A DNA stretch of 64,000 bases, taken from positions 470,456,001 to 470,520,000 of the forward strand of contig NC_091282.1 in NCBI RefSeq assembly GCF_032444005.1, in the 5' to 3' direction. Positions 2,794-58,179 of this stretch are shown piece after piece; positions within the stretch are counted from its first letter, which is position 1, and each line of letters opens with the position of its first letter. The notes under the pieces were generated by a model that made no database searches, was not told the DNA's origin, and worked only from the letters and a program-made list of their open reading frames with translations. Made by a program: the position numbers and the translations under genes. The stretch is from Ranitomeya imitator (taxonomy: Eukaryota).

Positions 2794-3837
2794 ATGGCAA
2801 GAAAAAAGCAGCTAAGTAAAGAAAAATGAGTGGCCATCATTACTTTAAGAAATTAATTTCAGTCAGTTCAAAAAATTGGGAAAATTTTGAAAGTGTCCCC
2901 AAGTGCAGTGGCAAAAACCATCAATCGCTACAAAGAAACTGGCTCACATGAGGACTGCCCCAGGACAGGAAGACCAAGAGTCACCTCCGCATCTCAGGAT
3001 AAGTTTCTCCGAGTCACCAACCTCAGAAATCGCAGGTTAACAGCAGCTCAGAATAGAGACCAGGTCAGTGCTACACAGAGTTTTAGCAGCAGACACATCT
3101 TTACAACAACTGCTAAGAGGAGACTGTGCAGCAGGCTTTCATGGTAAAATAGCTGCTAGGAAACCACTGCTAAGGACAGGCAACAAGCAGAAGAGACTTG
3201 TTTGGGCTAAAGAACACAAGGAATGGACATTAGACCAGTGGAAATCTGTGCTTTGGTCTGATGAGTACAAATTTTAGATCTTTGGTTCCAATCACCGTGT
3301 CTTTGTGTGACGCAGAAAAGGTGAATGGATGGACTCTACATGCCTGGTTCCCACCGTGAAGCATGGAGGAGGACGTGTGATGGTGTGGGGGTGTTTTGCT
3401 GGTGACACTGTTTGGGATTTATTCAAAATTGAAGGCATATTGAACTAGCATGGCTACCACAGCATCTTGCAGCGGCATGCTATTTCATCCAGTTTGCGTT
3501 TAGTTGGACCATCATTTATTTTTCAACAGGACAATGACCCCAAACACACTTCCAGGCTGTGTAAAGGCTATTTGACCAAGAAGGAGAGTGATGGGGTGCT
3601 ATGCCAGATGACCTGTCCTCCACAGTCACCAGACCTGAATCCAATCGAGATGGTTTGGGGTGAGCTGGACGGCAGAGTGAAGGCAAAAGGGCCAATAAGT
3701 GCTAAGCATCTCTGGGAAGTCCGAGATTGAAGACCATTCCCGGTGACTACCTCTTGAAGCTCATCAAGAGAATGCCAAGAGTGTGCAAAGCAGTCATCAA
3801 AGCAAAAGGTGGCTACTTTGAAGAACCTAGAATATAA
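2794..3837 (+). pseudogene. Tc1 transposase pseudogene (stops and frameshifts)
   Basis: ORF fragments contain ETGSHEDCPRTGRPRVT, WKSVLWSDE, FQQDNDPKH and SPDLNPIE (Tc1 DDE motifs); ATG at 2794, natural stop at 3835-3837. Confidence 0.9.
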
Positions 3838-17329: not shown

Positions 17330-19110
17330 TATTAACCCTTCAGGTGTTTCACAGGAATTTTTTCACAAAAAATTTATTCAGCTACAATTTGTTTTATTTT
17401 ACCAAGGGTAACAGGAGAAAATGGACCCCAATAGTTGCTGTACAATTTGACCTGAGTACGCTGATACCCCATATGTGGGGGTAAACCACTGTTTGGGCGC
17501 AAGGGAGAGCTCGGAAGGGAAGGAGCGCCATTTGACTTTTCAATGCAAAATTGACAGGAATTGAGATGGGACGCCATGTTGCGTTTGGAGTGCCACTGAT
17601 GTGCCTAATCATTGAAACCCCCACAAAGGACACCATTTTGGAAAGTAGACCCCCTAAGGAACTTATCTAGTTGTGTGGTGAGCACTTTGACCCATTAAAT
17701 GCTTCACAGAAGCTTATAATGCAGAGCTGTAAAAATAAAAATTTTCACAACAATGAACTTTTCGCCCCCAATTTTTCATTTTCTCAAGGGTAAGAGAAGA
17801 AATTGGACACCAAAGTTGTTGTACAATTTGTCCTGAGTACGCTGATACCCCATATGTCGGGGTAAACCACTGTTTGGGCGCAAGGGAGAGCTCAGAAGGG
17901 AAGGAGCGCCATCTCAGGAATTGAGATGGGACGCCATGTTGCGTTTGGAGAGCCACTGATGTGCCTAAACATTGAAGTTCCCCACAAGTGACACCATTTT
18001 GGAAAGTAGACCCCCTAAGGAATTCATCTAGATGTGTTGTGAGAGCTTTGAACCCCCAAATGTTTCACTACAGTTTATAAAGCAGAGCCGTGAAAAAAAT
18101 TTTTTCCCACAAAAATTATTTTTTAGCCCCCAGTTTTGTATTTTCCCAAGGGTAACAGGAGAAATTGGCCCCAAAAGTTGTTGTCCAATTTGTCCTGAGT
18201 ACACTGATACCCCATATGTGGGGGGAACCACCATTTGGTGCATGGGAGATCACGGGAGGGAAGGAGCAGACTTAGATGGATTGGTCTGCAGGCGTCACGT
18301 TGCGTTTGCAGAGCCCCTAATGTACCTAAACAGTAGAAACCCCCACAAGTGACCCCATATTGGAAACTAGACCACCAAGGAACTTATCTAGATGTGTTAT
18401 GAGAACTTTGAACCCCCAAGTGTTTCACTACAGTTTATAACGCAGAGCTGTGAAAATAAAAAATCTTTTTTTTTCCACAAAAATTATTTTTTAGCTCCCA
18501 GTTTTGTATTTTCCCAATGGTAAGAGAAGAAATTGGACCCCAATCGTTGTTGTCTAATTTGTCCTGAGTACGCTGATACCCAACATGTGTGGGGGAACCA
18601 CCATTTGGGCGCATGGCAGAGCTCGGAAGGGAAGGAACGCCATTTGGAATGCAGACTTAGATGGATTGGTCTGCAGGCTTCATGTTGCATTTGCAGAGCC
18701 CCTGATGTAACTAAACAGTAGAAAACCCCCACAACTGACCCCATATTGGAAACTAGACCCCCCAAGGAACTTATCTAGATGTGTTGTGAGAAGTTTGAAC
18801 CCCCAAGTGTTTCAATACAGTTTATATCGCAGAGCCGTGAAAATAAAAAATCTTTTTTTCCCACAAAAATTATTTTTTAGCCCCCAGTTTTGTATTTTCC
18901 CAAGGGTAACAAGATAAATTGGACACCAAAGCTGTTGTCCAATATCTCCTGAGTATGCTGATACCCCATATGTTGGGGTAAACCCCTGTTTGGGCGCACG
19001 GGAGAGCTCGGAAGGGAAGGAGCACTGTTTTACTTTTTCAACGCAGAATTGGCTGGAATTGAGATCGGACGCCATATAATGTTTGGAGAGCCCCTGATGT
19101 GCCTAAACAG
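17330..19110 (+). repeat. Tandem array of ~5 units of 362-385 bp
   Basis: Marker GAGTA(C/T)(G/A)CTGATACCC at 17454, 17835, 18197, 18566 and 18951. Fragments of the same unit occur at ~37230-37560 and ~40300-40430. Confidence 0.85.
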
Positions 19111-19132
19111 TTTAAACCCCCCAATTATAACT

Positions 19133-19315
19133 GAAACCCTAATCCGAACACACCCCTAACCCTAATCTCAATGGTAACCCTAACCACACCCCTAACCCTT
19201 ACACGCTCCTAACCCTAATCCCAACCCTATTCCCAATCGTAAATGCAATCCAAACCCTAACCCTAACTTTAGCCACAACCCTAACCCTAACTTTAGCCCC
19301 AACCCTAACCCTAAC
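19133..19315 (+). repeat. Degenerate telomere-like (CCCTAA)n tract
   Basis: Multiple AACCCTAACCCTAA units interspersed with CTTTAGCC variants; resumes as CCTAAC at 20082. Confidence 0.8.
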
Positions 19316-20081: not shown

Positions 20082-21449
20082 CCTAACCACCTGTTTTTTG
20101 CAGGACGAGTAGACGTTTTTATTGGTAACATTTTCGGGCACGTTACATTTTTTAATCGCTTTTTATTCCGATTTTTGTGAGGCAGAATGACCAAAAACCA
20201 GCTATTCATGAACTTCTATTGGGGGGCGGGCGTTTATACCGTTCCGCATTTGCTAAAATTGATAAAGCAGTTTTATTCTTCGGGTCAGTACGATTACAGC
20301 GATACCTCATTTATATCATTTTTTATGTTTTGTCGCTTTTATACGATAAAAACTCTTTTATAGAAAAATAATTATTTTTGCATCGCTTTATTCTGAGGAC
20401 TATAACTTTTTTATTTTTTTGCTGATGATGCTGTTTGGTGGCTCGTTTTTTGCGGGACAAGATGCCGTTTTCAGCGGTACCATGGTTATTTATATCCGTT
20501 TTTTTGATCGCGTGTTATTCCACTTTTTTTTCGGTGGTATGATAATAAAGTGTTGTTTTTTGCCTTTTTTTATGGTGTTCACTGAAGGGGTTAACTAGTG
20601 GGACATTTTTATAGGACGGGTCGTTATGGACACGGAGATACTAAATATGTGTACTTTTTTTATTTAGATAAAGGAATGTATTTATTGGAACAATATATTT
20701 TTTATATAATTATCTATTTAGGAATTTTTTTTTTCACACAAGTAAAAAATTTTATTTTTGTACTTTGCCCCGGGGGATAGAGGGGGGGGCATCACAGTTT
20801 GTTGACAGATCGCTGATCTGACACTTTGCCGTGCACTGTGTCAGATCAGCGATCACACAGGCAAAGCAGGGAAGCTTACCAGTGCTTGCTCTGAGCAGGC
20901 GCTGGTAAGCCACCTCCCTGCAGGACTCGGATGCAGCCCACCGGCCATTTTGGATCCGGGCCTGCAGGGAGGAACAGGTAAGAGACCCTCGCAGCAATGT
21001 GATCACATCGCGTTGCTCCGAAGGTCTCAGGGAAGCACGCAGCGAGCCCTCTCCCTGCACGATGCTTCCCTATGCCGCCGGAACACTGCAACGCCGGGGG
21101 TTAATGTGTCGGGGACAGTCCGTGACTGCTCCTGGAACATAGTGCCAGATATCAGCTGCGATAGTCAGCTGACACCCGGCCGCGATTATCGGCGCTCCCC
21201 CCGTGAGAGCGGCTGATCGCGCTGGACGTACTATTCCGTCCTTGGGATGTAGGGCCCATCCCACATGGACGGAATAGTACATCCAATGGCAGTAAGGGGT
21301 AAATTCTTAACTTTAGATCCCTCTTCTGGCTTCAGTAGGACAGACAACAAAAAAAGACTGAAAGGTGAAAGAAATTTTCACAGCATCTTATTTTGATTTT
21401 TTCTAAAAAACTGTATTATTTACTTAAAGGGGTTGTACCACAAACAAAG

Positions 21450-22424
21450 TGTTAGGACTGGCGGAACGCACCTAGACAGATGATAAAGGTGCGTTCGCAG
21501 TCCGGGGTCCACCGTGCAGGTGAGAACCTGCTGCTAGCAATTTGCAGACAATATGGCGGTACACTAAAGTATACACGCGTGGGTTAAACCTCACACAGCG
21601 TGAAGAAAGCGATCCTGTTAATTCACAGGACCGCAGTACCGCACTAGTGCGCGAGCAAGTGGTCAGCGGACTTAACCCCAGAAGGGATTGAAGCCCGATT
21701 AGACCCTTGCTGGCGTAACACCGCAACTGGGTGTGTAGAGAACCTTAAGAAATATAAGTGCACAAGAGTGCAAGCGATGCCGCACTAACGGACGCCACTA
21801 ACCACCCAGACTCGGGTATGGAAAGCGCAAGGCAGGCGCACGGCGCCGTACTGGCAGGCACAGCTACAGGACGCTGAGATGTGTGTTTAGTGCTGTAGGC
21901 TAAGTCGGGCGCTAGATAGCAGCCATACACCTTCCGCGAACAGACATTCAATAGGGTAGGGGTTTCCAAGGACGACTTGCACTCACAACATACACACATA
22001 AGCAATTGTCAGATAATACTAGCGCATGGCCGTGCGGTCATGCGCAGTTTATATAGCAGCAGCACAGGAAGAGGCCACAGCACCTTTGCCCTTCCAGGGC
22101 CTGCAAAGAGGACCAATGGAATGTGCTGCAGAGCCTGAGCACATGACCCTCGATCTCCAACGGGAGACCTTATGCTGGGCATGCTCAGTACGTGCAGACA
22201 AGGACTTAGTCCCAGGGAAGTCCGCTCGCTGCTGACCAGCATTGACTTTAATGGCAGAGACTGGAGAAGCAGCAGTAACTCTCAGAACAGAGTGAGGATG
22301 AGCAAGACGCTGGGACCGACGTCTTTGCTGAGCAGACTCCACTGCGGCTGGACAAGAATGGGAGACCGCAGCGGAGGCGGCTCGAGATTCCCCCTGTGCA
22401 GAAGCGGGAACTCGACCCCTAACA
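21450..22424 (-). repeat. 3' LTR
   Basis: Direct repeat of 26598-27572; preceded on the - strand by the polypurine tract AGGAGGGGGGGGTAA. Confidence 0.97.
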
Positions 22425-25400
22425 TTACCCCCCCCTCCTAGGGCCCCCCCCTCCTTGGGCCTCGCTACGTTCGAAGGCAGCAATGAGCTGCGGAGCCCGA
22501 ATGTGCTCAGCAGGCTCCCAGGATCTATCCTCAGGGCCGTAACCCCTCCAGTCCACTAAATAAAATTTTTTGCCACGAACCACCTTGTACCCCAAGATCG
22601 CGTTCACCTCGTAATCGTCCGTAGACGAACCCGACGTCTCAGTAGATGACTCAGAAAACCGGGACATGTAGACGGGCTTAAGGAGGGACACGTGAAAGGT
22701 GTCGGTGATACCCAGGCGTGGAGGAAGGGCCAGACGGTAAACCACAGGATTAACCTGTTCGAGGACCTTAAAAGGACCTAAGTAGCGAGGTGCAAACTTG
22801 GTGGACTCAACTCGCAGCCTGATGTTACGGGCGGAGAGCCACACTAAGTCGCCAGGAGCAAAGGTTGGAGCGGGGCGCCGATGTGCATCGGCGGAGGACC
22901 TCATTCTCTCCTTGGAAGCCTGAATAGCATCCTGAGTGCGATCCCAAATGTCCCGTGCCTCCACAGCCCAGTCTGCCACCCTGGAATCGGCGGAAGACAC
23001 GGGCATGGGCACAGGTACCCTCGGATGCTGACCATAGTTAAGGAGGAATGGAGTCTGTCCAGTGGAATCAGCGACAGCATTGTTAAGAGCAAACTCCGCC
23101 CACGGTAGCAAAGATGCCCAGTCATCCTGCTTAGCAGAAACAAAATGTCGCAGATATGTGACCAAGGTCTGGTTGGCTCTCTCTACCAACCCATTCGTCT
23201 CGGGATGATAAGCCGAAGAGAGATTCAACTCGATACTGAGAAGACGACAAAGCTCTCTCCAGAACCGAGACGCAAACTGGGGACCTCGGTCACTGACAAT
23301 TTTGTCTGGCATACCGTGAAGACGAAAGATGTGTTTGACAAACAACGCTGCCAAGGCCCGTGCAGAAGGTAACCGGGGAAGTGGCACCAAATGCACCATT
23401 TTAGAAAAATGGTCGGTGATTACCCAAATAATGGTACAGCCACGAGACTTGGGCAAACCCACAACAAAATCCATCCCGACCATTTCCCAGGGCCTGTCTG
23501 CCACCGGCAGAGGGTATAACAAACCAGCTGGCCGTTGTCGGGAAGACTTATTCTTGGCACAAGAGACACATGCCCGAACGTAGTCTCCGACGTCACGAAC
23601 CATATGTGGCCACCAGGACGTCCTCGCCAGTAGCTCAGAGGTCCTTTTAGCCCCAAAGTGTCCACCCACTCTGGACGAATGAGCCCAAGAGAGAACCTCC
23701 GGACGCAAATTGATGGGAACAAAAGTCTTGCCCGGGGGCACAGACTCCAGCGAAACCGGAGCTACAGTTCTCAGACTCTCCGAAGGGACAATGAGCCGAG
23801 GCTCGTCCTCCTCCTCCTCAGCTGACACGAAGGAGCGAGAGAGAGCGTCGGCACGAATGTTCTTCTCCCCGGCGAGATAATGTAGGGTAAAGTGGAACCG
23901 GGAGAAAAACAAGGACCATCTGGCCTGACGAGAATTCAGCCGCTGGGCTGTTTGTAAATAGACCAAATTCTTGTGATCCGTGAAAACCTGGAATGGGAAT
24001 CGGGCACCCTCCAAGAGATGTCTCCACTCAGAAAAGGCCAACTTCATTGCCAACAACTCTCTATCCCCGATGGAGTAATTTCTCTCCGCTGGTGTGAAGG
24101 TCTTAGAGAAAAAGAAGCATGGATGCTTCCGACCCTGAGCATCCTTTTGATAGAGGACTGCTCCAGCACCAACGGATGAGGCATCCACTTCCAAAAGGAA
24201 TGGCTTACCCACATCGGAACGATGTAAGATAGGAGCGCTGGCAAAATGGGTCTTTATAGAAGAGAAGGCCTTGGAGACCCCTTCGGACCACAATTTGGGA
24301 TTCGCTCCCTTCTTGGTGAGGGATACCAAGGGAGCTACCAAAGTTGAAAAGTGGGGAATGAACTGGCGATAGTAATTTATGAACCCCATAAAGCGCTGCA
24401 CCGCTTTAAGAGAATGGGGTTCCTGCCAGTCCATCACTGCTTGTAGTTTGGCAGGATCCATAGCCAATCCCTGGGCCGAGACAATATAGCCCAGGAAAGG
24501 CAAGGACTCCTGTTCAAACACACACTTCTCCAACTTTGCATACAAGGAATTTGCCCGTAAGAGTTCGAAGACTCTGCCAACATCTCTCCGGTGGGAGTCA
24601 ATATCTGGAGAAAAGATGAGAATATCATCCAGATAGACTACGACCGAGGTAGAAAGCATATCCCGGAAGATATCGTTGACGAAGTCCTGAAAAACGGCTG
24701 GGGCATTACAGAGCCCGACAGGCATCACCAGGTACTCATAGTGCCCATCCCTGGTATTGAAAGCCGTCTTCCACTCGTCCCCCTCACGGATACGAATCAG
24801 ATTGTAGGCACCCCGCAGATCTAACTTGGTGAATATTTTAGCTCCCCTTAACCTGTCAAAGAGCTCCGATATCAGGGGCAACGGGTATTTATTCTTAATG
24901 GTGATAGCATTGAGACCCCTGTAATCGATGCAAGGACGTAACTCTCCGTTCTTCTTCTGCACGAAGAAGAATCCCGCCCCTGCCGGAGACACTGACTTCC
25001 TTATAAATCCTCTTGCTAAATTCTCCTGAATGTATTGAGACATAGCCTCCGTCTCAGGGAGAGAGAGGGGATATACCCTTCCCCTAGGAGGTTCAGCTCC
25101 CGGCAAGAGGTCGATAGGACAGTCGTAAGGGCGATGGGGCGGTAGAGTCTCAGCAGCCTTTTTAGAGAACACGTCTGCATAACACCAATAATACCTGGGA
25201 AGCGACGAGAGATCTGCGGGTACCTGGGTAGTAGAGACCTGTACACACTCACTCACACATCTGCCCAAACATGACTTACTCCAGCCCAATATTTTCCCTG
25301 AGGACCACTCAATATGTGGCGAGTGGAAACGGAGCCAGGGTATTCCCAGCAAAATCTCATCCATTCCCTCAGGAAGGACAAGAAGGGAAATAATCTCCTG

Positions 25401-25697
25401 GTGGGAAGGAGACATGGACAGCGATAACGGGACTGTCTGGTGCGTGATTTGCAGTGGGAGTGTTGCCCCATTCACAACTCTAACCGTTATTGGTTTGGCG
25501 AGCATGACCAGTGGTATAGCATGACGTGTAGCAAAAGCAGAGGACATGAAACTTCCCTCTGCTCCTGAATCCACACAAAGGTCGACTGTAAGAGTGGAGG
25601 AGCCTAACAGGATTGTCCCTTTAAAGGACAGTTTGGAGGAGAATGCTGCTGTGTCTAGTGAACCTCCCCCAATGGCCACTAGACGCGATCGTTTCCC
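22425..25697 (-). CDS. pol: Pol polyprotein (protease-RT-RNase H-integrase-chromodomain), expressed by -1 frameshift
   Basis: ORF 22425-25712 (1095 aa): LCVDSGA protease, YLDDILIFS RT, VDASSVGAGAVL RNase H, H-H-C-C plus DDE integrase, GPF motif, chromodomain YEVNAIL...YLVDWRGYGPEDRSWEP. Confidence 0.96.
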   Translation of the reverse strand, partial: GKRSRLVAIGGGSLDTAAFSSKLSFKGTILLGSSTLTVDLCVDSGAEGSFMSSAFATRHAIPLVMLAKPITVRVVNGATLPLQITHQTVPLSLSMSPSHQEIISLLVLPEGMDEILLGIPWLRFHSPHIEWSSGKILGWSKSCLGRCVSECVQVSTTQVPADLSSLPRYYWCYADVFSKKAAETLPPHRPYDCPIDLLPGAEPPRGRVYPLSLPETEAMSQYIQENLARGFIRKSVSPAGAGFFFVQKKNGELRPCIDYRGLNAITIKNKYPLPLISELFDRLRGAKIFTKLDLRGAYNLIRIREGDEWKTAFNTRDGHYEYLVMPVGLCNAPAVFQDFVNDIFRDMLSTSVVVYLDDILIFSPDIDSHRRDVGRVFELLRANSLYAKLEKCVFEQESLPFLGYIVSAQGLAMDPAKLQAVMDWQEPHSLKAVQRFMGFINYYRQFIPHFSTLVAPLVSLTKKGANPKLWSEGVSKAFSSIKTHFASAPILHRSDVGKPFLLEVDASSVGAGAVLYQKDAQGRKHPCFFFSKTFTPAERNYSIGDRELLAMKLAFSEWRHLLEGARFPFQVFTDHKNLVYLQTAQRLNSRQARWSLFFSRFHFTLHYLAGEKNIRADALSRSFVSAEEEEDEPRLIVPSESLRTVAPVSLESVPPGKTFVPINLRPEVLSWAHSSRVGGHFGAKRTSELLARTSWWPHMVRDVGDYVRACVSCAKNKSSRQRPAGLLYPLPVADRPWEMVGMDFVVGLPKSRGCTIIWVITDHFSKMVHLVPLPRLPSARALAALFVKHIFRLHGMPDKIVSDRGPQFASRFWRELCRLLSIELNLSSAYHPETNGLVERANQTLVTYLRHFVSAKQDDWASLLPWAEFALNNAVADSTGQTPFLLNYGQHPRVPVPMPVSSADSRVADWAVEARDIWDRTQDAIQASKERMRSSADAHRRPAPTFAPGDLVWLSARNIRLRVESTKFAPRYLGPFKVLEQVNPVVYRLALPPRLGITDTFHVSLLKPVYMSRFSESSTETSGSSTDDYEVNAILGYKVVRGKKFYLVDWRGYGPEDRSWEPAEHIRAPQLIAAFERSEAQGGGGPRRGG
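25653..25697 (-). promoter_or_regulatory. Programmed -1 ribosomal frameshift signal
   Basis: G GGA AAC heptamer (25697-25691) in the gag frame, 6-nt spacer, then an 8-bp stem GTCTAGTG/CACTAGAC; pol is in the -1 frame. Confidence 0.85.
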
Positions 25698-26566
25698 GAC
25701 CGCCGCGGACATTTATTGGCGTAATGTCCATGTTGTCGACAGTTATTACAAACTACGGGTACTCGAGCGGCTAGAGATTTAGGTCCCGCTCGAGAAACCT
25801 CCATGGCCTCATGAGAATCTGACGCCAAGACAGGAGATTCCAGAGGTCTGGCGAAAGTTGGAGCCAGCCGAAACCTCTGCCTACACTGGGTCCGCTCCAA
25901 CCTCCGCTCGTGAAAACGGAGGTCGATGCGGGTAGACACGGAAATAAGTTCCTCCAGTGTGGCCGGTATCTCCCTAGTGGCCAAGGCGTCTTTCACGTGG
26001 TCTGCCAGTCCCCTCCAGAACACCGGAATAAGAACTTTGTCTGGCCACTCTAACTCTGAAGCTAGAGTCCGGAACTGAATGGCAAACTGGCTGACCACGG
26101 AGGTACCCTGTGTAATGGACAACAATTGGAGTGCGGTGTCGTGGGTAACCCGAGGCCCTAAAAAGACCTGCTTCAGAGTGTCCAAGAAGAGAGGAGCACT
26201 CTGTACCACACGATCATCTCGCTCCCAGAGTGGCGTTGCCCACTCCAACGCCCTGCCCGACAAGAGAGATAGGATAAATCCCACTCTCGCCCGCTCCGTA
26301 GGAAAACGTGACGCCAGGAGCTCAAGATGTATAGAGCACTGACTCACGAATCCACGACAATGTTTGCTGTCGCCAGCAAACTTGTCAGGTAGTGGGAGAC
26401 GGGATAAAGTCGGAGCAGGGGTGGCAGTGGACAAACTGGCTGCGGCTACACTTGCAGCCTGCACAGCTACAGCAGTGACATCCACAGCTGAGGTTGTACG
26501 CTCAAGAGCCGCCAACCTTCCCTCCAGCTGCTGGATGTACCGCTGTAAACGCTGGTCGTCCGCCAT
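25679..26566 (-). CDS. gag: Gag (PEG10/RTL-like capsid with CCHC knuckle), 295 aa
   Basis: LPLPDKFAGD...CRGFVSQC...ALEWATPLWE capsid-like segment; CNNCRQHGHYANKC zinc knuckle. Confidence 0.95.
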   Translation of the reverse strand: MADDQRLQRYIQQLEGRLAALERTTSAVDVTAVAVQAASVAAASLSTATPAPTLSRLPLPDKFAGDSKHCRGFVSQCSIHLELLASRFPTERARVGFILSLLSGRALEWATPLWERDDRVVQSAPLFLDTLKQVFLGPRVTHDTALQLLSITQGTSVVSQFAIQFRTLASELEWPDKVLIPVFWRGLADHVKDALATREIPATLEELISVSTRIDLRFHERRLERTQCRQRFRLAPTFARPLESPVLASDSHEAMEVSRAGPKSLAARVPVVCNNCRQHGHYANKCPRRSGNDRV

Positions 26567-26585
26567 TTTTACTAGCCAGACCCTG

Positions 26586-26596
26586 GCGCTAGTATT
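26586..26596 (-). promoter_or_regulatory. Self-priming primer binding site (AATACTAGCGC)
   Basis: Lies 1 nt inside the 5' LTR boundary; perfectly complementary to GCGCTAGTATT at 27173-27163, which starts 30 nt downstream of the first T of TATATAAA (27203-27196). Confidence 0.85.
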
Positions 26597-26597
26597 C

Positions 26598-27572
26598 TGT
26601 TAGGACTGGCGGAACGCACCTAGACAGATGATAAAGGTGCGTTCGCAGTCCGGGGTCCACCGTGCAGGTGAGAACCTGCTGCTAGCAATTTGCAGACAAT
26701 ATGGCGGTACACTAAAGTATACACGCGTGGGTTAAACCTCACCCAGCGTGAAGAAAGCGATCCTGTTAATTCACAGGACCGCAGTACCGCACTAGTGCGC
26801 GAGCAAGTGGTCAGCGGACTTAACCCCAGAAGGGATTGAAGCCCGATTAGACCCTTGCTGGCGTAACACCGCAACTGGGTGTGTAGAGAACCTTAAGAAA
26901 TATAAGTGCACAAGAGTGCAAGCGATGCCGCTCTAACGGACGCCACTAACCACCCAGACTCGGGTATGGAAAGCGCAAGGCAGGCGCACGGCGCCGTACT
27001 GGCAGGCACAGCTACAGGACGCTGAGATGTGTGTTTAGTGCTGTAGGCTAAGTTGGGCGCTAGATAGCAGCCATACACCTTCCGCGAACAGACATTCAAT
27101 AGGGTAGGGGTTTCCAAGGACGACTTGCACTCACAACATACACACATAAACAATTGTCAGATAATACTAGCGCATGGCCGTGCGGTCATGCGCAGTTTAT
27201 ATAGCAGCAGCACAGGAAGAGGCCACAGCACCTTTGCCCTTCCAGGGCCTGCAAAGAGGACCAATGGAATGTGCTGCAGAGCCTGAGCACATGACCCTCG
27301 ATCTCCAACGGGAGACCTTATGCTGGGCATGCTCAGTACGTGCAGACAAGGACTTAGTCCCAGGGAAGTCCGCTCGCTGCTGACCAGCATTGACTTTAAT
27401 GGCAGAGACTGGAGAAGCAGCAGTAACTCTCAGAACAGAGTGAGGATGAGCAAGACGCTGGGACCGACGTCTTTGCTGAGCAGACTCCACTGCGGCTGGA
27501 CAAGAATGGGAGACCGCAGCGGAGGCGGCTCGAGATTCCCCCTGTGCAGAAGCGGGAACTCGACCCCTAACA
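26598..27572 (-). repeat. 5' LTR with TATA box
   Basis: Near-identical to the 3' LTR (four substitutions seen by eye); TATATAAA on the - strand at 27203-27196. Confidence 0.97.
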
Positions 27573-29101
27573 CAAAGTTCATTGTAATCAATAGATCTTG
27601 GAATAATAATAATTTTCAAAATTAGATGTTTTAAAAAAAATGTTGCTGTACTGAGATAATCTTATACATGTGCCCTTGCTATGTGCTGTCCAATTGTTAT
27701 GTCTGAACATGCAAGGACATGGTCTGATCATACCACAGCTCCAGGGCTGGGGGGGAAGTAAAAAAGTATACTGATATTACAGCATGGGATCACAAATAAT
27801 TATTTCTTTGATGTAAAACATTTATTTAAAAGAGGCAGGGAAATGCTTTATCTCACAACAAGAATCAGCTGTGATCCCCTGCTGTCCTGTCTGTATACTC
27901 TTTTGCTTCCTCCCCTGCCCAGGAGATGCGGTATGAGCAGACCATGTCCCTGTACGGTCAGACACGACCATTGCACAGTACACAGCAGGGACACATTTAT
28001 AAGATTATCTCAGCACAAGAACATTTTCATTAAACACATCCAGTTGTGGAAATTATTATTATTCCAAGATCTATTGATTAAATCAACTAGAAAAGTAGCT
28101 TTGTTTGAGGGAAAATCTCTTTATGCCTTTTCATTTCCTCTACAATTCTGGTACAGAAACTCACAATCCATGCAGAAACTATATAGAAAATATTGCCTGT
28201 GTCTTGAAAAAAATGAAATCACAATTACATATTTAGAATTCATATTTATATTTGTGTGTGAGCTAGTTGTAAATTATCATTTTTTTCCTCTGATTGAATA
28301 ATTTTTTGACTAAAATATTATAGCTGTAGGAGTTGTGACAGTTCACTCCATTTACGTAGTCTTTACTAACGTGTCAAACAGTAAACATGAAATGATACTT
28401 TGTCAATCACAAGTTTCTTTGCCGGAATGGTAGGGAAAGCTGGATTAATTTTCTATGCCTTTTGTTTTTTTTTTCTTCCCTTTGTAAAAGAACATACATC
28501 TACAAGATTAGGAATATGTTGCAGAAGCGTCTCCTGTGGGCACCCCAGGCATAAGATGCTTTGTTTGAGGATGTGTCAAACAGAAGTATTGATTTGCCTC
28601 TTCATAGAATGCAAGAGGGAGGGAGATTAATTATTTCCTTTGAAATGCCAAGCAAAACAAGACAATGAACATAAAAGGACATCATATGAATAAAATATAT
28701 ATGAGACAAGTTTATATATCCTAATTATAAACCCCTGCATAGGTATCTTCTTGTAAATTGTTATGCACCAACTAAACATTTTTTTCTTAGGAATACTGCT
28801 GTGAATATCATTGTGGTTAAAGTCATTTGTCCTCTGAACAACAGTAAACCCAGCTGTGTAGTCTTACGTACTTGCCTACTCAAATATTGAAACTATGTTT
28901 TTATATAGCAGTTTTAGGTGCATAATTACAAAACATTTGGGATATAGTTCATCCATTCCTGTAAATTCCAATAATTTCGCTGGTGTTCCAAACACCACAC
29001 TAAGGTCACACTTAGCCTATGTGATGTCGTTATGACTATGTTGCTCTCCATCTCAATCTCACAATCACTCCCAATGAAGCTATGGATTAAACCCAACACA
29101 C

Positions 29102-33234: not shown

Positions 33235-35474
33235 GTTGCCCTTTGTACGGTTTCTTTAAGTGTCTATCTGGTAGCCTAGTGTTGATTTTTGGTTGTGCAC
33301 TTGGATATATTGGAAAATAAATGCATTAATGTGCTCTATACAGTTCGTCATGTTTCAACCTTAAACAGAATAAAAACATGAGCAATGAAACATGCTCTAT
33401 GTATGCGGCTAGTTCGAAAATCTTACCCACACATACCTTTATAAAGGAAAATTCAACATAATACCTCTGTTAGCATATGCCATATCCTGTTCATCTAAGC
33501 ATCACTCCAGTAGGTGGGTGGAAAGGCTGGGTACAATATCTGTGTCCGACGGTGAAACTACTGGCCCTTCCCCTATGTTACGCAATTCCCACTCTGCTGT
33601 CCAGGAAGGAGAGCGCAGATGCCTCCAGTCCACAACCTGCAGTTCTACAGACACAATAGTCAGAAACTACTTCCAGTTTGTTGTTCCAGCACATCATTTA
33701 GTTGCCACTTGTCAGCATATATGTCTGTTCACAAATTTTTAGTTAGATATGGCATACATATTTGTTAACAATTTACATTGTCCACTGCTGGACAAAGACC
33801 ATTGCTGACTTTTCCAGGCTCCTAAATGAGACTTTTGTCTTTTTATTAAGCTTTTGCTTCCTTTATACTTTCTAAAGTTGGGTCCTTACAAAAAAGTGGT
33901 GTTAGTGTTTTGGCCAGTCTAAGAGACTGGGTTAATGCGCTCCACAGACCTATACAGGGCGAAGCCTTGCACATATTGAAACATGGTAATTGCCACGGTA
34001 AGGCCTTTACCTGATCTCTATAGCCCTGCCTGTCACCTGAGTAATATGCTCCACAGAGGTCGTCACTCTCTGGGACACAGCCTGTACTTCATTGTTGCTC
34101 AAAACCATGCAAATGATACATTCTGCCTGGTTGGGTAGTTTTCAGAAGAAATTATGAAGGAAAAAATGTTTCTTTGCATTTTTCCTTTTAAAAAATGTTG
34201 GTTTGGTTTGGTAGGTCTTTTTAAAAATCTGTAAAACTAGCGCAATAGTCTGACAGCATTATACTCAGATACCATAAGTGAGTCAGAAGGCATGCAGGCA
34301 TCTTCTCCATGCAGTTCCCATTTCGTTGTTTCTCTTTCCCATCGATTTCAGCTGTTTTCCCATGCCCCCAGTCCTGTTTGTTGTGCCCAACAGAAAAATA
34401 TTCGTCTTTCCCATTGACTTGCATTGGAGTCGCTATTCAGTACGAATACACGGATATTAGATAACATTTGTGCTGATTTTCCCAAATCTGAATATTTGAC
34501 AATTCGATAATTACTATTAGGTTTTTCTTAGGCTTCAATGGAGCAATTTCATATCGCCCATTAACTCTGTATGTCCAGCAAAATTAATTAGGGTCAGTAA
34601 ATACATATTTGTTAAGACAAAATACATTGCGCAGGTAGGACTTCAATTCGATTGGTGATAGGTGTCGAGCTCCCGACTTTGCACAGGGGGAATCTCGAAC
34701 CACCTCCTCTGCGATCTCCCATCCTTCTCCAGCCACAGTGGAGCCTGCAAAGTGGAGACGTCGGTCCCAGCACCTGGCTCAGGCTGATACTGGGCAGCTG
34801 GTTGCTACTGTTCTTCCAGGTTCTGCCTTTGTAACCAGTATTGGTCAGCGGCGAGCAGACGTCTCTGTGACTAAGTCATGCTTTTCCCCTTCTGAGCATG
34901 CCCAGGGTAAGACCTCTCATTGGAGGTCGGAGGTCACATGCTCAGATACTGCAGCAGCTCCCATTGGTCCTCTAGGAAGGTCTTGAAGTTGCTCAGGTAC
35001 TGCAGCAGCTCCCATTGGTCCTCTAGGAAGGTCTTGAATATTGCTGCAGCTATAAAAGGTTCGCATGGCCGCATGGCCATGCGCTAGTATCAAACCAATG
35101 TCTATGAGCTCATCGCCAGTGTGGTCATGTCTGGATGTGGTTAGGGTTTGGCTGAAATAAGCCCCTAGAATACCGGCACCTCCGGTGAGGAGTTAGTGTG
35201 AATGTATTCAGGGCCTTGGCTGAAATAAGCTGCTAGAATACCGGCACCTCCGGTGAGGAGTTGTTTGTCTATTTTCTCTGACTGCATGACCACAGTTTGC
35301 TCTGGTTGGTAGCTGTGTACCTCTGTGAGGTTAACAGGGCACAGCATTGTTCCTAGTGACTCTGTGGAGTTAACAGAGATTGCTTATATTGCCATATAGG
35401 GCTGACATTTGCCAGCATCAGGTTCCTCTCCTGCACGGTGGACCCCGGGTTGCGAACGCACCTAATAATACATA

Positions 35475-37081
35475 CAGTGGGGCAAAAAAGTATTTAGTCA
35501 GTCAGCAATAGTGCAAGTTCCACCACTTAAAAAGATGAGAGGCGTCTGTAATTTACATCATAGGTACACCTCAACTATGGGAGACAAACTGAGAAAAAAA
35601 AATCCAGAAAATCATATTGTCTGTTTTTTTAACATTTTATTTGCATATTATGGTAGAAAATAAGTATTTGGTCAGAAACAAAATTTCATCTCAATACTTT
35701 GTAATATATCCTTTGTTGGCAATGACAGAGGTCAAACGTTTTCTGTAAGTCTTCACAAGGTTGCCACACACTGTTGTTGGTATGTTGGCCCATTCCTCCA
35801 TGCAGATCTCCTCTAGAGCAGTGATGTTTTTGGCTTTTCGCTTGGCAACACGGACTTTCAACTCCCTCCAAAGGTTTTCTATAGGGTTGAGATCTGGAAA
35901 CTGGCTAGGCCACTCCAGGACCTTGAAATGCTTCTTACAAAGCCACTCCTTCGTTGCCCTGGCGGTGTGCTTTGGATCATTGTCATGTTGAAAGACCCAG
36001 CCACATTTCATCTTCAATGCCCTTGCTGATGGAAGGAGGTTTGCACTCAAAATCTCACGATACATGGCCCCATTCATTCTTTCATGTACCCGGATCAGTC
36101 GTCCTGGCCCCTTTGCAGAGAAACAGCCCCAAAGCATGATGTTTCCACCACCGTGCTTTACAGTAGGTATGGTGTTTGATGGATGCAACTCAGTATTCTT
36201 TTTCCTCCAAACACGACAAGTTGTGTTTCTACCAAACAGTTCCAGTTTGGTTTCATCAGACCATAGGACATTCTCCCAAAACTCCTCTGGATCATCCAAA
36301 TGCTCTCTAGCAAACTTCAGACAGGCCCGGACATGTACTGGCTTAAGCAGTGGGACATGTCTGGCACTGCAGGATCTGAGTCCATGGTGGCGTAGTGTGT
36401 TACTTATGGTAGGCCTTGTTACATTGGTCCCAGCTCTCTGCAGTTCATTGACTAGGTCCCCCCGCGTGGTTCTGGGATTTTTGCTCACCGTTCTTGTGAT
36501 CATTCTGACCCCACGGGGTGGGATTTTGCGTGGAGCCCCAGATCGAGGGAGATTATCAGTGGTCTTGTATGTCTTCCATTTTCTAATTATTGCTCCCACT
36601 GTTGATTTCTTCACTCCAAGCTGGTTGGCTATTGCAGATTCAGTCTTCCCAGCCTGGTGCAGGGCTACAATTTTGTTTCTGGTGTCCTTTGACAGCTCTT
36701 TGGTCTTCACCATAGAGGAGTTTGGAGTCAGACTGTTTGAGGGTGTGCACAAGTGTCTTTTTATACTGATAACAAGTTTAAACAGGTGCCATTACTACAG
36801 GTAATGAGTGGAGGAAAGAGGAGACTCTTAAAGAAGAAGTTACAGGTCTGTGAGAGCCAGAAATCTTGATTGTTTGTTTCTGACCAAATACTTATTTTCC
36901 ACCATAAAATGCAAAAAAAATGATAAAAAAAACAGACAATGTGATTTTCTGGATTTTTTTTTCTCAGTTTGTCTCCCATAGTTGAGGTCTACCTATGATG
37001 TAAATTACAGACGCCTCTCATCTTTTTAAGTGGTGGAACTTGCACTATTGCTGACTGACTAAATACTTTTTTGCCCCACTG
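35475..37081 (-). mobile_element. Full-length Tc1 transposon with ~200-bp TIRs
   Basis: TA|CAGTGGGGCAAAAAAGTATTTAG...CTAAATACTTTTTTGCCCCACTG|TA. Confidence 0.96.
35691..36713 (-). CDS. Tc1 DD34E transposase, intact ORF (340 aa from [10 protein letters not shown])
   Basis: [25 protein letters not shown]; no stops within ORF 35691-36752. Confidence 0.92.
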
Positions 37082-37559
37082 TATATTTATACTCGGTGCG
37101 TTCCGTCAACCCTACCAATTGGTTACTGCTGGTCACATTAATCACTATCCAGGGAGGCAAACTTCCAAATCATGGTTGCTACAATCATCTTTGTAAAAAC
37201 TAAATAAATATATATATATATATATATACTTTAGCTCCAAATTTGTTATTTTCACAAGGGTAACAGGTGAAAATGCCTGCAATTTCTTCTGAGTAGTCCA
37301 ATACCCTATAAGTGGTAGAAATTCACTGTTTAAGCGCACAGCAGGGCTCAGATTTGAAGGAGCACTGTTTGACTTTTTGAATGCAAAAACAGCTGGAATC
37401 GAGAGCGGACACCATGTCATGTTTGGAGAGCCCCTGATGTTCCTAAGCAGTGGAAATCCCCCCAAATTGACTCCATTTTGGAAACTAGACCCCTTAGGGA
37501 ACTTATCGAGATGTGTCATGAACATCTTGATCCTCCAGGTGCTTCACAGAATTTTATAA

Positions 37560-56573: not shown

Positions 56574-58179
56574 CAGTGGGGCAAAAAAGTATTTAGTCAG
56601 TCAGCAATAGTGCAAGTTCCACCACTTAAAAAGATGAGAGGCGTCTGTAATTTACATCATAGGTAGACCTCAACTATGGGAGACAAACTGAGAAAAAAAA
56701 ATCCAGAAAATCACATTGTCTGTTTTTTTATCATTTTTTTTGCATATTATGGTGGAAAATAAGTATTTGGTCAGAAACAAACAACCAAGATTTCTGGCTC
56801 TCACAGACCTGTAACTTCTTCTTTAAGAGTCTCCTCTTTCCTCCACTCATTACCTGTAGGAATGGCACCTGTTTAAACTTGTTATCAGTATAAAAAGACA
56901 CCTGTGCACACCCTCAAACAGTCTGACTCCAAACTCCACTATGGTGAAGACCAAAGAGCTGTCAAAGGACACCAGAAACAAAATTGTAGCCCTGCACCAG
57001 GCTGGGAAGACTGAATCTGCAATAGCCAACCAGCTTGGAGTGAAGAAATCAACAGTGGGAGCTATAATTAGAAAATGGAAGACATACAAGACCACTGATA
57101 ATCTCCCTTGATCTGGGGCTCCACGCAAAATCCCACCCCGTGGGGTCAGAATGATCACAAGAACGGTGAGCAAAAATCCCAGAACCACGCGGGGGGACCT
57201 AGTGAATGAACTGCAGAGAGCTGGGACCAATGTAACAAGGCCTACCATAAGTAACACACTACGCCACCATGGACTCAGATCCTGCAGTGCCAGACGTGTC
57301 CCACTCCTTAAGCCAGTACATGTCCGGGCCCGTCTGAAGTTTGCTAGAGAGCATTTGGATGATCCAGAGGAGTTTTGGGAGAATGTCCTATGGTCTGATG
57401 AAACCAAACTGGAACTGTTTGGTAGAAACACAACTTGTCGTGTTTGGAGGAAAAAGAATACTGAGTTGCATCCATCAAACACCATACCTACTGTAAAGCA
57501 TGGTGGTGGAAACATCTTGCTTTGGGGCTGTTTCTCTGCAAATGGGCCAGGATGACTGATCCGGGTGCATGAAAGAATGAATGGGGCCATGTATCGTGAG
57601 ATTTTGAGTGCAAACCTCCTTCCATCAGCAAGGGCATTGAAGATGAAACGTGGCTGGGTCTTTCAACATGACAATGATCCAAAGCACACTGCCAGGGCAA
57701 CGAAGGAGTGGCTTCGTAAGAAGCATTTCAAGGTCCTGGAGTGGCCTAGCCAGTCTCCAGATCTCAACCCTATAGAAAACCTTTGGAGGGAGTTGAAAGT
57801 CCGTGTTGCCAAGCGAAAAGCCAAAAACATCACTGCTCTAGAGGAGATCTGCATGGAGGAATGGGCCAACATACCAACAACAGTGTGTGGCAACCTTGTG
57901 AAGACTTACAGAAAACGTTTGACCTCTGTCATTGCCAACAAAGGATATATTACAAAGTATTGAGATGAAATTTTGTTTCTGACCAAATACTTATTTTCCA
58001 CCATAATATGCAAATAAAATGTTAAAAAAACAGACAATGTGATTTTCTGGATTTTTTTTTATCAGTTTGTCTCCCATAGTTGAGGTCTACCTATGATGTA
58101 AATTACAGACGCCTCTCATCTTTTTAAGTGGTGGAACTTGCACTATTGCTGACTGACTAAATACTTTTTTGCCCCACTG
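56574..58179 (+). mobile_element. Tc1 transposon, second copy of the 35475-37081 family; transposase (56941-57963) has two premature stops
   Basis: Same TIRs; TGA at 57109-57111 and 57553-57555 where the other copy has CGA (Arg). Confidence 0.95.

What the first reader, a model, noticed from the sequence alone, without database searches (positions are those of the whole stretch)
26586..27203. tRNA-independent self-priming signature (11-nt PBS complementary to the predicted transcript 5' end)
There is no TGG-type tRNA PBS. Instead AATACTAGCGC just inside the 5' LTR pairs perfectly with GCGCTAGTATT located 30 nt downstream of the TATA box, i.e. at the expected transcription start. This is the architecture of Tf1-type self-priming, in which the first 11 nt anneal to the PBS and are cleaved by RNase H to form the primer (established for Tf1; inferred here).
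Basis: partly seen in the sequence, partly recalled or inferred. Interest (0 to 1): 0.7.

Follow-up and report, generated by a model that had tools for sequence, protein, structure and literature searches.

The report
Self-priming frog gypsy retrotransposon
An intact, recently inserted jumping gene in a poison-frog-like genome carries, where a tRNA primer site would normally sit, an 11-base site that pairs with the predicted start of its own RNA; this self-priming layout is already known from yeast Tf1 and its vertebrate relatives, so it is real but ordinary.

Summary
The element lies on the minus strand: LTRs 27572..26598 and 22424..21450, 975 bp each with 4 mismatches, 5-bp target duplication CTTTG, intact gag and pol.

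One base (G) after the 5' LTR end (..ACA) comes AATACTAGCGC (26596..26586). Its only exact complement in the LTR, GCGCTAGTATT (27173..27163), starts 30 nt after the first T of TATATAAA, has T at -1 and G at +1, and cannot be extended on either side.

Five related elements from fish assemblies and a marine sample (pol 47-50% identical where measured) show the same layout with different sequences: ACA, G, an 11-mer starting AA, and its complement in their own LTR 30-31 nt after a TATA-like box. The match is 11/11 in four and 10/11 in one. Eight of the 11 pairs covary, all Watson-Crick.

This rules out chance and a shared tRNA primer, and supports Tf1-type self-priming. That mechanism is described as a common feature of the Tf1/sushi chromovirus group, vertebrates included (Butler 2001, cited in PMC10085805 and PMC6317226). 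This scan reached the same reading on another piece of this genome (s1-288117).

The transcription start and RNase H cleavage were not shown: only contigs were available, no raw RNA reads. Verdict: new member of a known kind, low interest.

The parts
26598..27572 (-). 5' LTR (975 bp, TGTTAGG...CCTAACA). U3 is 27572..27174 (399 nt); predicted R-U5 is 27173..26598 (576 nt).
   Evidence: Offset comparison with 21450-22424 gives 4 mismatches in 975 bp; sequence.
21450..22424 (-). 3' LTR, with its own copy of the TATA box and the 11-mer (22025..22015)
27573..27577 (-). 5-bp target-site duplication CTTTG (5' copy); the 3' copy is at 21445-21449
   Evidence: Read; tabulated.
27196..27203 (-). TATA box TATATAAA; its first T is 30 nt upstream of the predicted start G at 27173
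   Evidence: The same -30/-31 spacing occurs in five relatives.
27163..27173 (-). Predicted self-primer: the first 11 nt of the RNA (GCGCUAGUAUU), with T at -1 and G at +1
   Evidence: Exact complement of the PBS. Kept as GCGCTAGTATc in a solo LTR that is only 71% identical.
26603..26651 (-). Predicted U5 stem-loop just upstream of the PBS: arms 26651..26635 and 26621..26603, 13-nt loop
   Evidence: Appears in the MFE and centroid folds. Two pairs change on both sides in the solo LTR arms (A-U to G-C, C-G to U-A), read.
26597..26597 (-). Single spacer base G between the LTR end (..ACA) and the PBS; the same base is found in all six families compared
26586..26596 (-). Primer-binding site AATACTAGCGC, complementary to the predicted RNA 5' end and not to a tRNA 3' end
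25679..26566 (-). gag ORF (295 aa): RTL1-8/LDOC-type and Ty3-type capsid domains plus a sub-threshold zinc-knuckle match
25691..25697 (-). GGGAAAC heptamer in the gag/pol overlap, phased G GGA AAC in the gag frame; candidate -1 frameshift site
   Evidence: pol is in the -1 frame relative to gag.
22425..25712 (-). pol ORF (1095 aa): protease, RT, RNase H, integrase, Tf2-type SH3 domain, chromodomain
   Evidence: The best solved relative is Ty3 Gag-Pol.
22428..22439 (-). Polypurine tract AGGAGGGGGGGG, followed by the pol stop codon TAA and then the 3' LTR
   Evidence: Relatives have the same G-run, then TAC, then TGT.
34656..37117 (+). Solo LTR of a sister family (TSD ATTGG at 34651-34655 and 37118-37122), split by a Tc1-like insertion at 35475-37081. 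It keeps the TATA box and the 11-mer (35081-35091).

Best explanation
This is an intact, young V-clade (Amn/sushi-like) chromovirus of the Ty3/gypsy group in a dendrobatid-frog-like genome, and it most likely primes its own reverse transcription as Tf1 does.

Inferred sequence of events: RNA polymerase II starts at G 27173, 30 nt after the TATA box. The first 11 nt of the RNA fold back over the 576-nt R-U5 and pair with the PBS, which begins one base after U5. The element's RNase H cuts after base 11. The freed 3' OH is extended through the spacer G and U5-R to give minus-strand strong-stop DNA. The rest follows the usual LTR scheme, with plus-strand priming from the polypurine tract at 22439..22428.

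Shown here: the anatomy, the exact and non-extendable 11-bp complementarity, its conservation with covariation across relatives, and the predicted fold. Not shown: the transcription start, the cleavage, and the priming.
For: (1) Complete element: LTRs 99.6% identical, TG..CA termini, 5-bp TSD, gag and pol ORFs with PR-RT-RH-IN-SH3(Tf2)-chromodomain.

(2) The PBS 11-mer sits at offset +1 from the LTR end and has one exact complement in the LTR, at -30 from the TATA box. It is the only internal 11-mer with an LTR complement.

(3) The same layout occurs in L001, L003, L004 and L005 (11/11) and in L006-L008 (10/11), with different sequences. Eight of 11 positions covary, all Watson-Crick. Each PBS reaches 11 only against its own LTR, or against L004/L005, which share the same 11-mer; otherwise the best cross-match is 5-7 nt, and none of 5 or more in one case.

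(4) T at -1, G at +1 and a TATA-like box at -30/-31 hold in all six families, and in the window's solo LTR.

(5) MFE folds pair 10-11 of the 11 bases, with mean pair probability 0.91-0.98.

(6) Literature: the first 11 bases of Tf1 RNA pair with the PBS and RNase H cuts between bases 11 and 12 (PMC7175516). Self-priming is a common feature of Tf1/sushi elements, vertebrate ones included (PMC10085805, PMC6317226, PMC4600332).
Against: There is no direct RNA evidence. Every run holding the stretch was served as contigs and none is on record as RNA, so the start at 27173 is a prediction.

The two flanking duplexes of the Tf1 'pretzel' structure were not better than shuffled controls in a rough duplex test.

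The fold-back spans 576 nt, which I recall as much longer than in Tf1.

No canonical AATAAA or ATTAAA lies in R-U5 of this LTR, so the R/U5 boundary is unknown.

A local 7-bp hairpin (26594..26588 with 26576..26570) could compete for the PBS.
Confidence: 0.85

Rival explanations
1. The element is primed by a host tRNA or tRNA fragment, and the LTR match is incidental.
For: tRNA priming is the default for LTR elements. I had no host tRNA set to search, only the window, which holds no tRNA gene.
Against: No TGG abuts the LTR; the nearest TGG is 19 nt downstream, which would give wrong LTR ends. Related elements carry four other 11-mers at this place, each matching its own LTR, whereas a host tRNA site would be shared. 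Rfam finds nothing tRNA-like.
Confidence: 0.03
2. The 5'-end/PBS-position pairing is real and selected, but it serves another purpose (circularising the RNA for packaging, dimerisation or translation control), and the primer is something else.
For: Covariation shows that pairing matters, not what it is for. Flanking 'pretzel' duplexes were not detected.
Against: The paired site sits exactly where minus-strand synthesis must begin to make correct LTR ends: one base after ..CA. No other candidate PBS is present. The strict 10-11 bp length and its end at the predicted +1 match Tf1, where priming was demonstrated (PMC7175516).
Confidence: 0.08
3. The match is a chance complementarity in a repeat-rich window.
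For: Short matches are common in 64 kb.
Against: Probability is about 2e-4 per element for a fixed 11-mer. The match is seen at the same offset in six families, is the only such internal 11-mer in four of the five elements scanned (L001 has one further match), and lies at -30 from a TATA box each time.
Confidence: 0.01

Closest known systems
Tf1 / Tf2 of Schizosaccharomyces pombe (founders of self-primed reverse transcription)
   Same: Chromodomain gypsy element. The PBS is complementary to the first 11 bases of its own RNA, next to the 5' LTR end ..CA. 5-bp TSD. Tf2-type SH3 domain in integrase (PMC7175516, PMC10085805).
   Different: Tf1 has a single gag-pol ORF; here gag and pol overlap with a -1 shift. 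The Tf1 three-duplex 'pretzel' was not recovered here; a strong U5 hairpin precedes the PBS instead. The fold-back loop is 576 nt. Cleavage and priming are shown for Tf1 and only inferred here.
sushi-ichi and other vertebrate Tf1/sushi elements (Butler et al. 2001, J Mol Evol 52:260; not held in the library, cited in PMC6317226, PMC4600332, PMC10085805)
   Same: Vertebrate host, chromodomain, gag of the RTL/LDOC (sushi-related) type, predicted self-priming.
   Different: I could not read that paper or fetch its sequences, so direct comparison of the 11-mers, the G spacer and the structures was not possible. Host here is a dendrobatid-like frog.
Amn-san / V-clade chromoviruses of frogs (PMC4131045, PMC2774666)
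   Same: The most abundant and most transcribed LTR elements in Silurana tropicalis, about 5 kb, chromodomain-bearing. The X. tropicalis proteins P0009 and P0011 are 53-54% identical to this pol.
   Different: PMC4131045 never mentions a PBS or self-priming; this window adds that anatomy for a frog copy.
Tj1 (S. japonicus) and the plant Tcn1 clade
   Same: Self-priming predicted from PBS/5'-LTR complementarity alone, as here (PMC4600332, PMC6317226).
   Different: Fungal and non-seed-plant hosts. Tj1 was also shown to transpose.

Membership tests
Tf1/sushi group of chromoviruses (self-priming Ty3/gypsy elements) | Ty3/gypsy domain order PR-RT-RH-IN | tested here: met
   Pfam hits in that order along the 1095-aa pol. 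Best solved relative is Ty3 Gag-Pol, E about 1e-137.
Tf1/sushi group of chromoviruses (self-priming Ty3/gypsy elements) | Chromodomain at the integrase C-terminus | tested here: met
   PF00385 at residues 1034-1082, E 1e-12; PF24626 SH3_Tf2-1 at 954-1014, E 4e-21.
Tf1/sushi group of chromoviruses (self-priming Ty3/gypsy elements) | PBS next to the 5' LTR complementary to a site in the LTR at the RNA 5' end, not to a tRNA | tested here: met
   Exact 11-nt complement, unique, at -30 from the TATA box, covarying in five relatives. That the site is the true RNA 5' end is predicted, not mapped.
Tf1/sushi group of chromoviruses (self-priming Ty3/gypsy elements) | Transcript actually begins at the self-primer; RNase H cuts between bases 11 and 12 | not testable with these tools
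   Only Logan contigs were available and no run is on record as RNA. Exact gag is not on record.
Tf1/sushi group of chromoviruses (self-priming Ty3/gypsy elements) | Three-duplex 'pretzel' RNA structure: primer-PBS duplex flanked by two duplexes between PBS-adjacent and LTR sequences (PMC10085805) | tested here: inconclusive
   The central duplex is strongly predicted. Flanking duplexes were no better than shuffled controls in all five elements tested. A U5 hairpin with two compensatory pairs precedes the PBS.
Tf1/sushi group of chromoviruses (self-priming Ty3/gypsy elements) | RT/IN phylogeny groups it with Tf1, sushi-ichi and Amn elements | not tested
Indirect support only: the closest full-length proteins are vertebrate chromodomain gypsy polyproteins, one named Tf2-6 by its source, and gag carries PF16297 RTL1-8/LDOC.
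tRNA-primed LTR retrotransposons | PBS of about 10-18 nt starting TGG, 0-5 nt after the LTR, complementary to a tRNA 3' end (or to an internal tRNA fragment shared across the family) | tested here: not met
   The sequence after the LTR is G then AATACTAGCGC, with no TGG. The site differs in every related family and tracks that family's own LTR.

The most novel reading that the evidence does not exclude
The vertebrate branch keeps a very strict rule: LTR end ACA, one G, an 11-mer beginning AA and followed by C, with T at -1 and G at +1 at the start site. It holds from fish to frog while the 11-mer itself changes freely. The frog lineage pairs the primer across a 576-nt loop with a covarying U5 hairpin and no detectable Tf1-style flanking duplexes. 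If real, the RT/RNase H would measure 11 bp from a capped 5' end without the 'pretzel', and this copy (99.6% identical LTRs, open frames) may still be mobile in the frog germline.
Probability: 0.3. Interest if true: 0.35.

Novelty: new member of a known kind. Interest (0 to 1): 0.22.

Why it matters
It gives a clean, fully annotated amphibian example of self-primed reverse transcription, with comparative (covariation) support and not just a single-sequence coincidence. That helps in annotating LTR elements whose PBS matches no tRNA, and in choosing start-site and primer coordinates for expression studies of the most active LTR family in frogs. It does not change what is known about the mechanism.

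Tried and rejected
- **RNA evidence for the start site.** The look-up of sequencing runs listed 17 holders, none on record as RNA and all kept as contigs. Read laying on 25700-27650 gave short fragments of a very abundant, variable family, with no starts or ends. Its only hint: three contig joints land at 27164, so family variants diverge just 3' of the primer.
- **Looking for transcript contigs.** Exact gag is not on record. gag homologues are only dendrobatid genome models plus distant relatives.
- **Close frog relatives** (Ranitomeya imitator P0001, P0008). The same happened for three ENA proteins.
- **L002** (pol 58% identical). It has ACA, G, TAAGATCCGGC and then the ATG, but the contig lacks the middle of the LTR, so the complement could not be checked.
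- **'Pretzel' flanking duplexes.** Not above shuffled controls.
- **tRNA and Rfam.** No tRNA gene in the window. Only a sub-threshold miRNA-model hit, 23 bits against a gathering score of 72; taken as chance.
- **Original Tf1 papers** (PMC1369541, PMC1563812, PMC109269, PMC230564). Not held; secondary sources used instead.
- **Solo LTR halves.** The two hairpin arms were compared separately by eye.

Full report
**What is at the coordinates.** The finding lies in the 5' LTR and leader of a complete LTR retrotransposon on the minus strand. The LTRs are 27572..26598 and 22424..21450. Each is 975 bp, they differ at 4 positions, and they begin TGTTAGG and end CCTAACA. The element is flanked by a 5-bp duplication, CTTTG.

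Between the LTRs lie two ORFs:
- A 295-aa gag (26566..25679) with RTL1-8/LDOC-type, Retrotrans_gag and Ty3-capsid domains, plus a zinc-knuckle match just below Pfam's cut-off.
- A 1095-aa pol (25712..22425) with protease, RT, RNase H, integrase zinc-binding and core domains, a Tf2-type SH3 domain and a C-terminal chromodomain.

Pol is in the -1 frame relative to gag. The overlap contains GGGAAAC, phased G GGA AAC in the gag frame. A polypurine tract (22439..22428) precedes the pol stop codon and the 3' LTR. The closest proteins are from Ranitomeya imitator (85-93% identical) and other dendrobatid frogs, followed by Xenopus tropicalis and many fish. The host is therefore a poison-frog-like anuran. 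Ty3 Gag-Pol is the best solved relative.

**The observation.** On the element strand the 5' LTR ends ..CCTAACA (26598). Then comes one G (26597), then AATACTAGCGC (26596..26586), then 19 nt before the gag ATG at 26566. The exact complement GCGCTAGTATT lies at 27173..27163, with a second copy in the 3' LTR. TATATAAA occupies 27203..27196, so its first T is 30 nt upstream of G 27173, and the base before that G is T.

The bases flanking both 11-mers cannot pair, so the duplex is exactly 11 bp.

A fixed 11-mer has a probability of about 2.3e-4 of finding an exact complement in 975 nt. Of the 4163 overlapping internal 11-mers of this element, the only one with a complement in the LTR is the one at offset +1.

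**Is it a tRNA site?** No TGG abuts the LTR, and the nearest TGG is 19 nt downstream. The window has no tRNA gene. Rfam gives only a far sub-threshold miRNA-model hit in 26400-27700. I had no host tRNA set, so the argument against a tRNA fragment rests on the comparative data below.

**Comparative test.** I fetched DNA for relatives of pol and gag. For each I defined the LTRs by self-comparison. In every family the 5' LTR ends ACA and is followed by a single G.

| Element | Source | PBS 11-mer | Complement in own LTR |
|---|---|---|---|
| L001 | GCA_977066385.1, pol 48% identical | AACGGTCAGAC | GTCTGACCGTT |
| L003 | Prochilodus magdalenae, pol 50% | AAAGACTGAGC | GCTCAGTCTTT |
| L004, L005 | two assemblies, pol 49% and 47%, LTRs of 425 and 452 bp | AACGATCTGAC | GTCAGATCGTT |
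| L006-L008 | marine metagenome contigs, one family | AACGAAACAGC | GCTGTTTCGTG (10 of 11; A-G at position 11) |

Features shared by all families:
- The complement has T at -1 and G at +1.
- A TATA-like box (TATTTAAGG, TACTTAAGAG, TATATATTC, TTTATC, TTTATAAGG) begins at -30 or -31.
- In the five elements scanned for this (window, L001, L003-L005), the 11/11 pairing cannot be extended, and the base after the PBS is C in all six families.
- The 5-bp TSD and the G-run, TAC, TGT junction at the 3' LTR are shared by L001 and L003-L005; the TSD of L005 has one mismatch.

Across the six families, positions 2-9 of the duplex each show two to four different Watson-Crick pairs. Positions 1 and 10 are invariant, and position 11 is T-A except in L006. 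Each PBS finds a full complement only in its own LTR, or in L004/L005, which share the same 11-mer. Against the other LTRs the longest match is 5-7 nt, and in one case there is none of 5 or more.

A solo LTR of a sister family in this window (34656-37117, TSD ATTGG) is split by a Tc1-like insertion. It is only 71% identical over the aligned U3, yet it keeps the TATA box, the spacing and GCGCTAGTATc.

Together these results exclude chance and exclude a shared host tRNA. They show that the pairing itself is under selection.

**Structure.** Folding the predicted R-U5-PBS RNA of each of the five elements with complete LTR pairs closes the molecule with the 5'-end/PBS duplex. Ten or eleven of the 11 pairs appear in the MFE, with mean pair probability 0.91-0.98. 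The window RNA folds 5.8 sd better than shuffles.

Directly upstream of the PBS, the frog LTR forms a 17-bp bulged hairpin (26651..26603). The arms of the solo LTR differ at two pairs on both sides (A-U to G-C and C-G to U-A), which preserves the stem. That is only two sequences, so it is weak evidence. I compared the arms separately and did not join the halves of the interrupted LTR.

Tf1 is reported to need two further duplexes flanking the primer-PBS duplex, the 'pretzel' structure (PMC10085805). A rough duplex search between PBS-adjacent segments and the 80 nt after the primer was no better than shuffled controls in any element. That feature is therefore inconclusive.

**What could not be shown.** The transcription start at 27173, the RNase H cut and the priming are all inferred. 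Every public run holding this stretch is served as contigs and none is on record as RNA. Laying four of those runs showed a very abundant, variable family in short pieces, with no molecule ends. Three contig joints land at 27164, meaning variants diverge immediately 3' of the primer. This fits a conserved primer but proves nothing.

The frog R-U5 has no AATAAA or ATTAAA, whereas L001, L004 and L005 have one about 50 nt before the LTR end. The R/U5 boundary here is therefore unknown.

**Comparison with what is known.**
- Self-priming is called a common feature of the Tf1/sushi group (PMC10085805).
- It has been described in the group from yeast and vertebrates (PMC6317226, citing Butler et al. 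2001, Lin and Levin 1997, Atwood-Moore et al. 2006).
- It has been implicated from fungi to vertebrates (PMC4600332).
- Vertebrate chromoviruses (V-clade: Amn-like and sushi-like) occur in fish, amphibians and amniotes (PMC2774666).
[quoted passage not shown] That paper does not mention a PBS or self-priming.

An earlier follow-up of this scan reached the same reading for sister families on another piece of this genome (s1-288117). My analysis was done independently, on this window and on fish relatives.

**Verdict.** What is present is a new, well-preserved frog member of a known self-priming group. The small additions are the strict ACA-G-AA(N9)-C layout with T/G at the start site, conserved from fish to frog; the long fold-back; and the U5 hairpin. 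Interest is low.

Noticed in passing
window 25691-25697 (minus strand): GGGAAAC in the gag/pol overlap, phased G GGA AAC in the gag frame with pol in the -1 frame. From memory, this is the heptamer reported for the sushi-derived mammalian gene PEG10. Candidate programmed -1 frameshift site.
   Followed up: partly
window 26570-26594 (minus strand): A local 7-bp inverted repeat: TACTAGC inside the PBS (26594..26588) pairs with GCTAGTA (26576..26570) across an 11-nt loop. It could compete with the primer for the PBS. The fish relative checked by eye (L001) lacks it.
   Followed up: partly
window 26598-27173 (minus strand); L001, L004, L005: The frog R-U5 (576 nt) has no AATAAA or ATTAAA, only ACTAAA at +135. 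Three fish relatives have a canonical signal 48-51 nt before the LTR end. Where this element's RNA is polyadenylated is open.
   Followed up: partly
window 34656-37117 and 56574-58179: A solo LTR of a sister chromovirus family (TSD ATTGG), interrupted in its U5 hairpin loop by a 1.6-kb Tc1-like transposon (35475-37081). A second copy with identical 27-nt terminal repeats lies at 56574-58179.
   Followed up: partly
window 27164 (contig joints in runs X1, X6, X12): Three different contig joints (from 26668, 27069 and 27088) all land at 27164, and a 6-base deletion sits at 27158. Family variants seem to differ in length right after the 11-mer while keeping the 11-mer itself.
   Followed up: no
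L006:1902-1912 and 3107-3117 (also L007, L008): A related element from marine-metagenome contigs pairs only 10 of 11 bases (A-G at position 11). L006 looks like two elements in tandem sharing one LTR (pol end, LTR, gag).
   Followed up: partly
L002:260-285: The closest non-dendrobatid relative (pol 58% identical) has ACA, G, TAAGATCCGGC and then directly the gag ATG. Its 11-mer starts with T, not A. The contig lacks the LTR middle, so pairing could not be tested.
   Followed up: partly
window 18012-19224: About three units of a roughly 385-bp tandem repeat (18012-19121), followed by degenerate CCCTAA-like telomere-type repeats (19128-19224).
   Followed up: no
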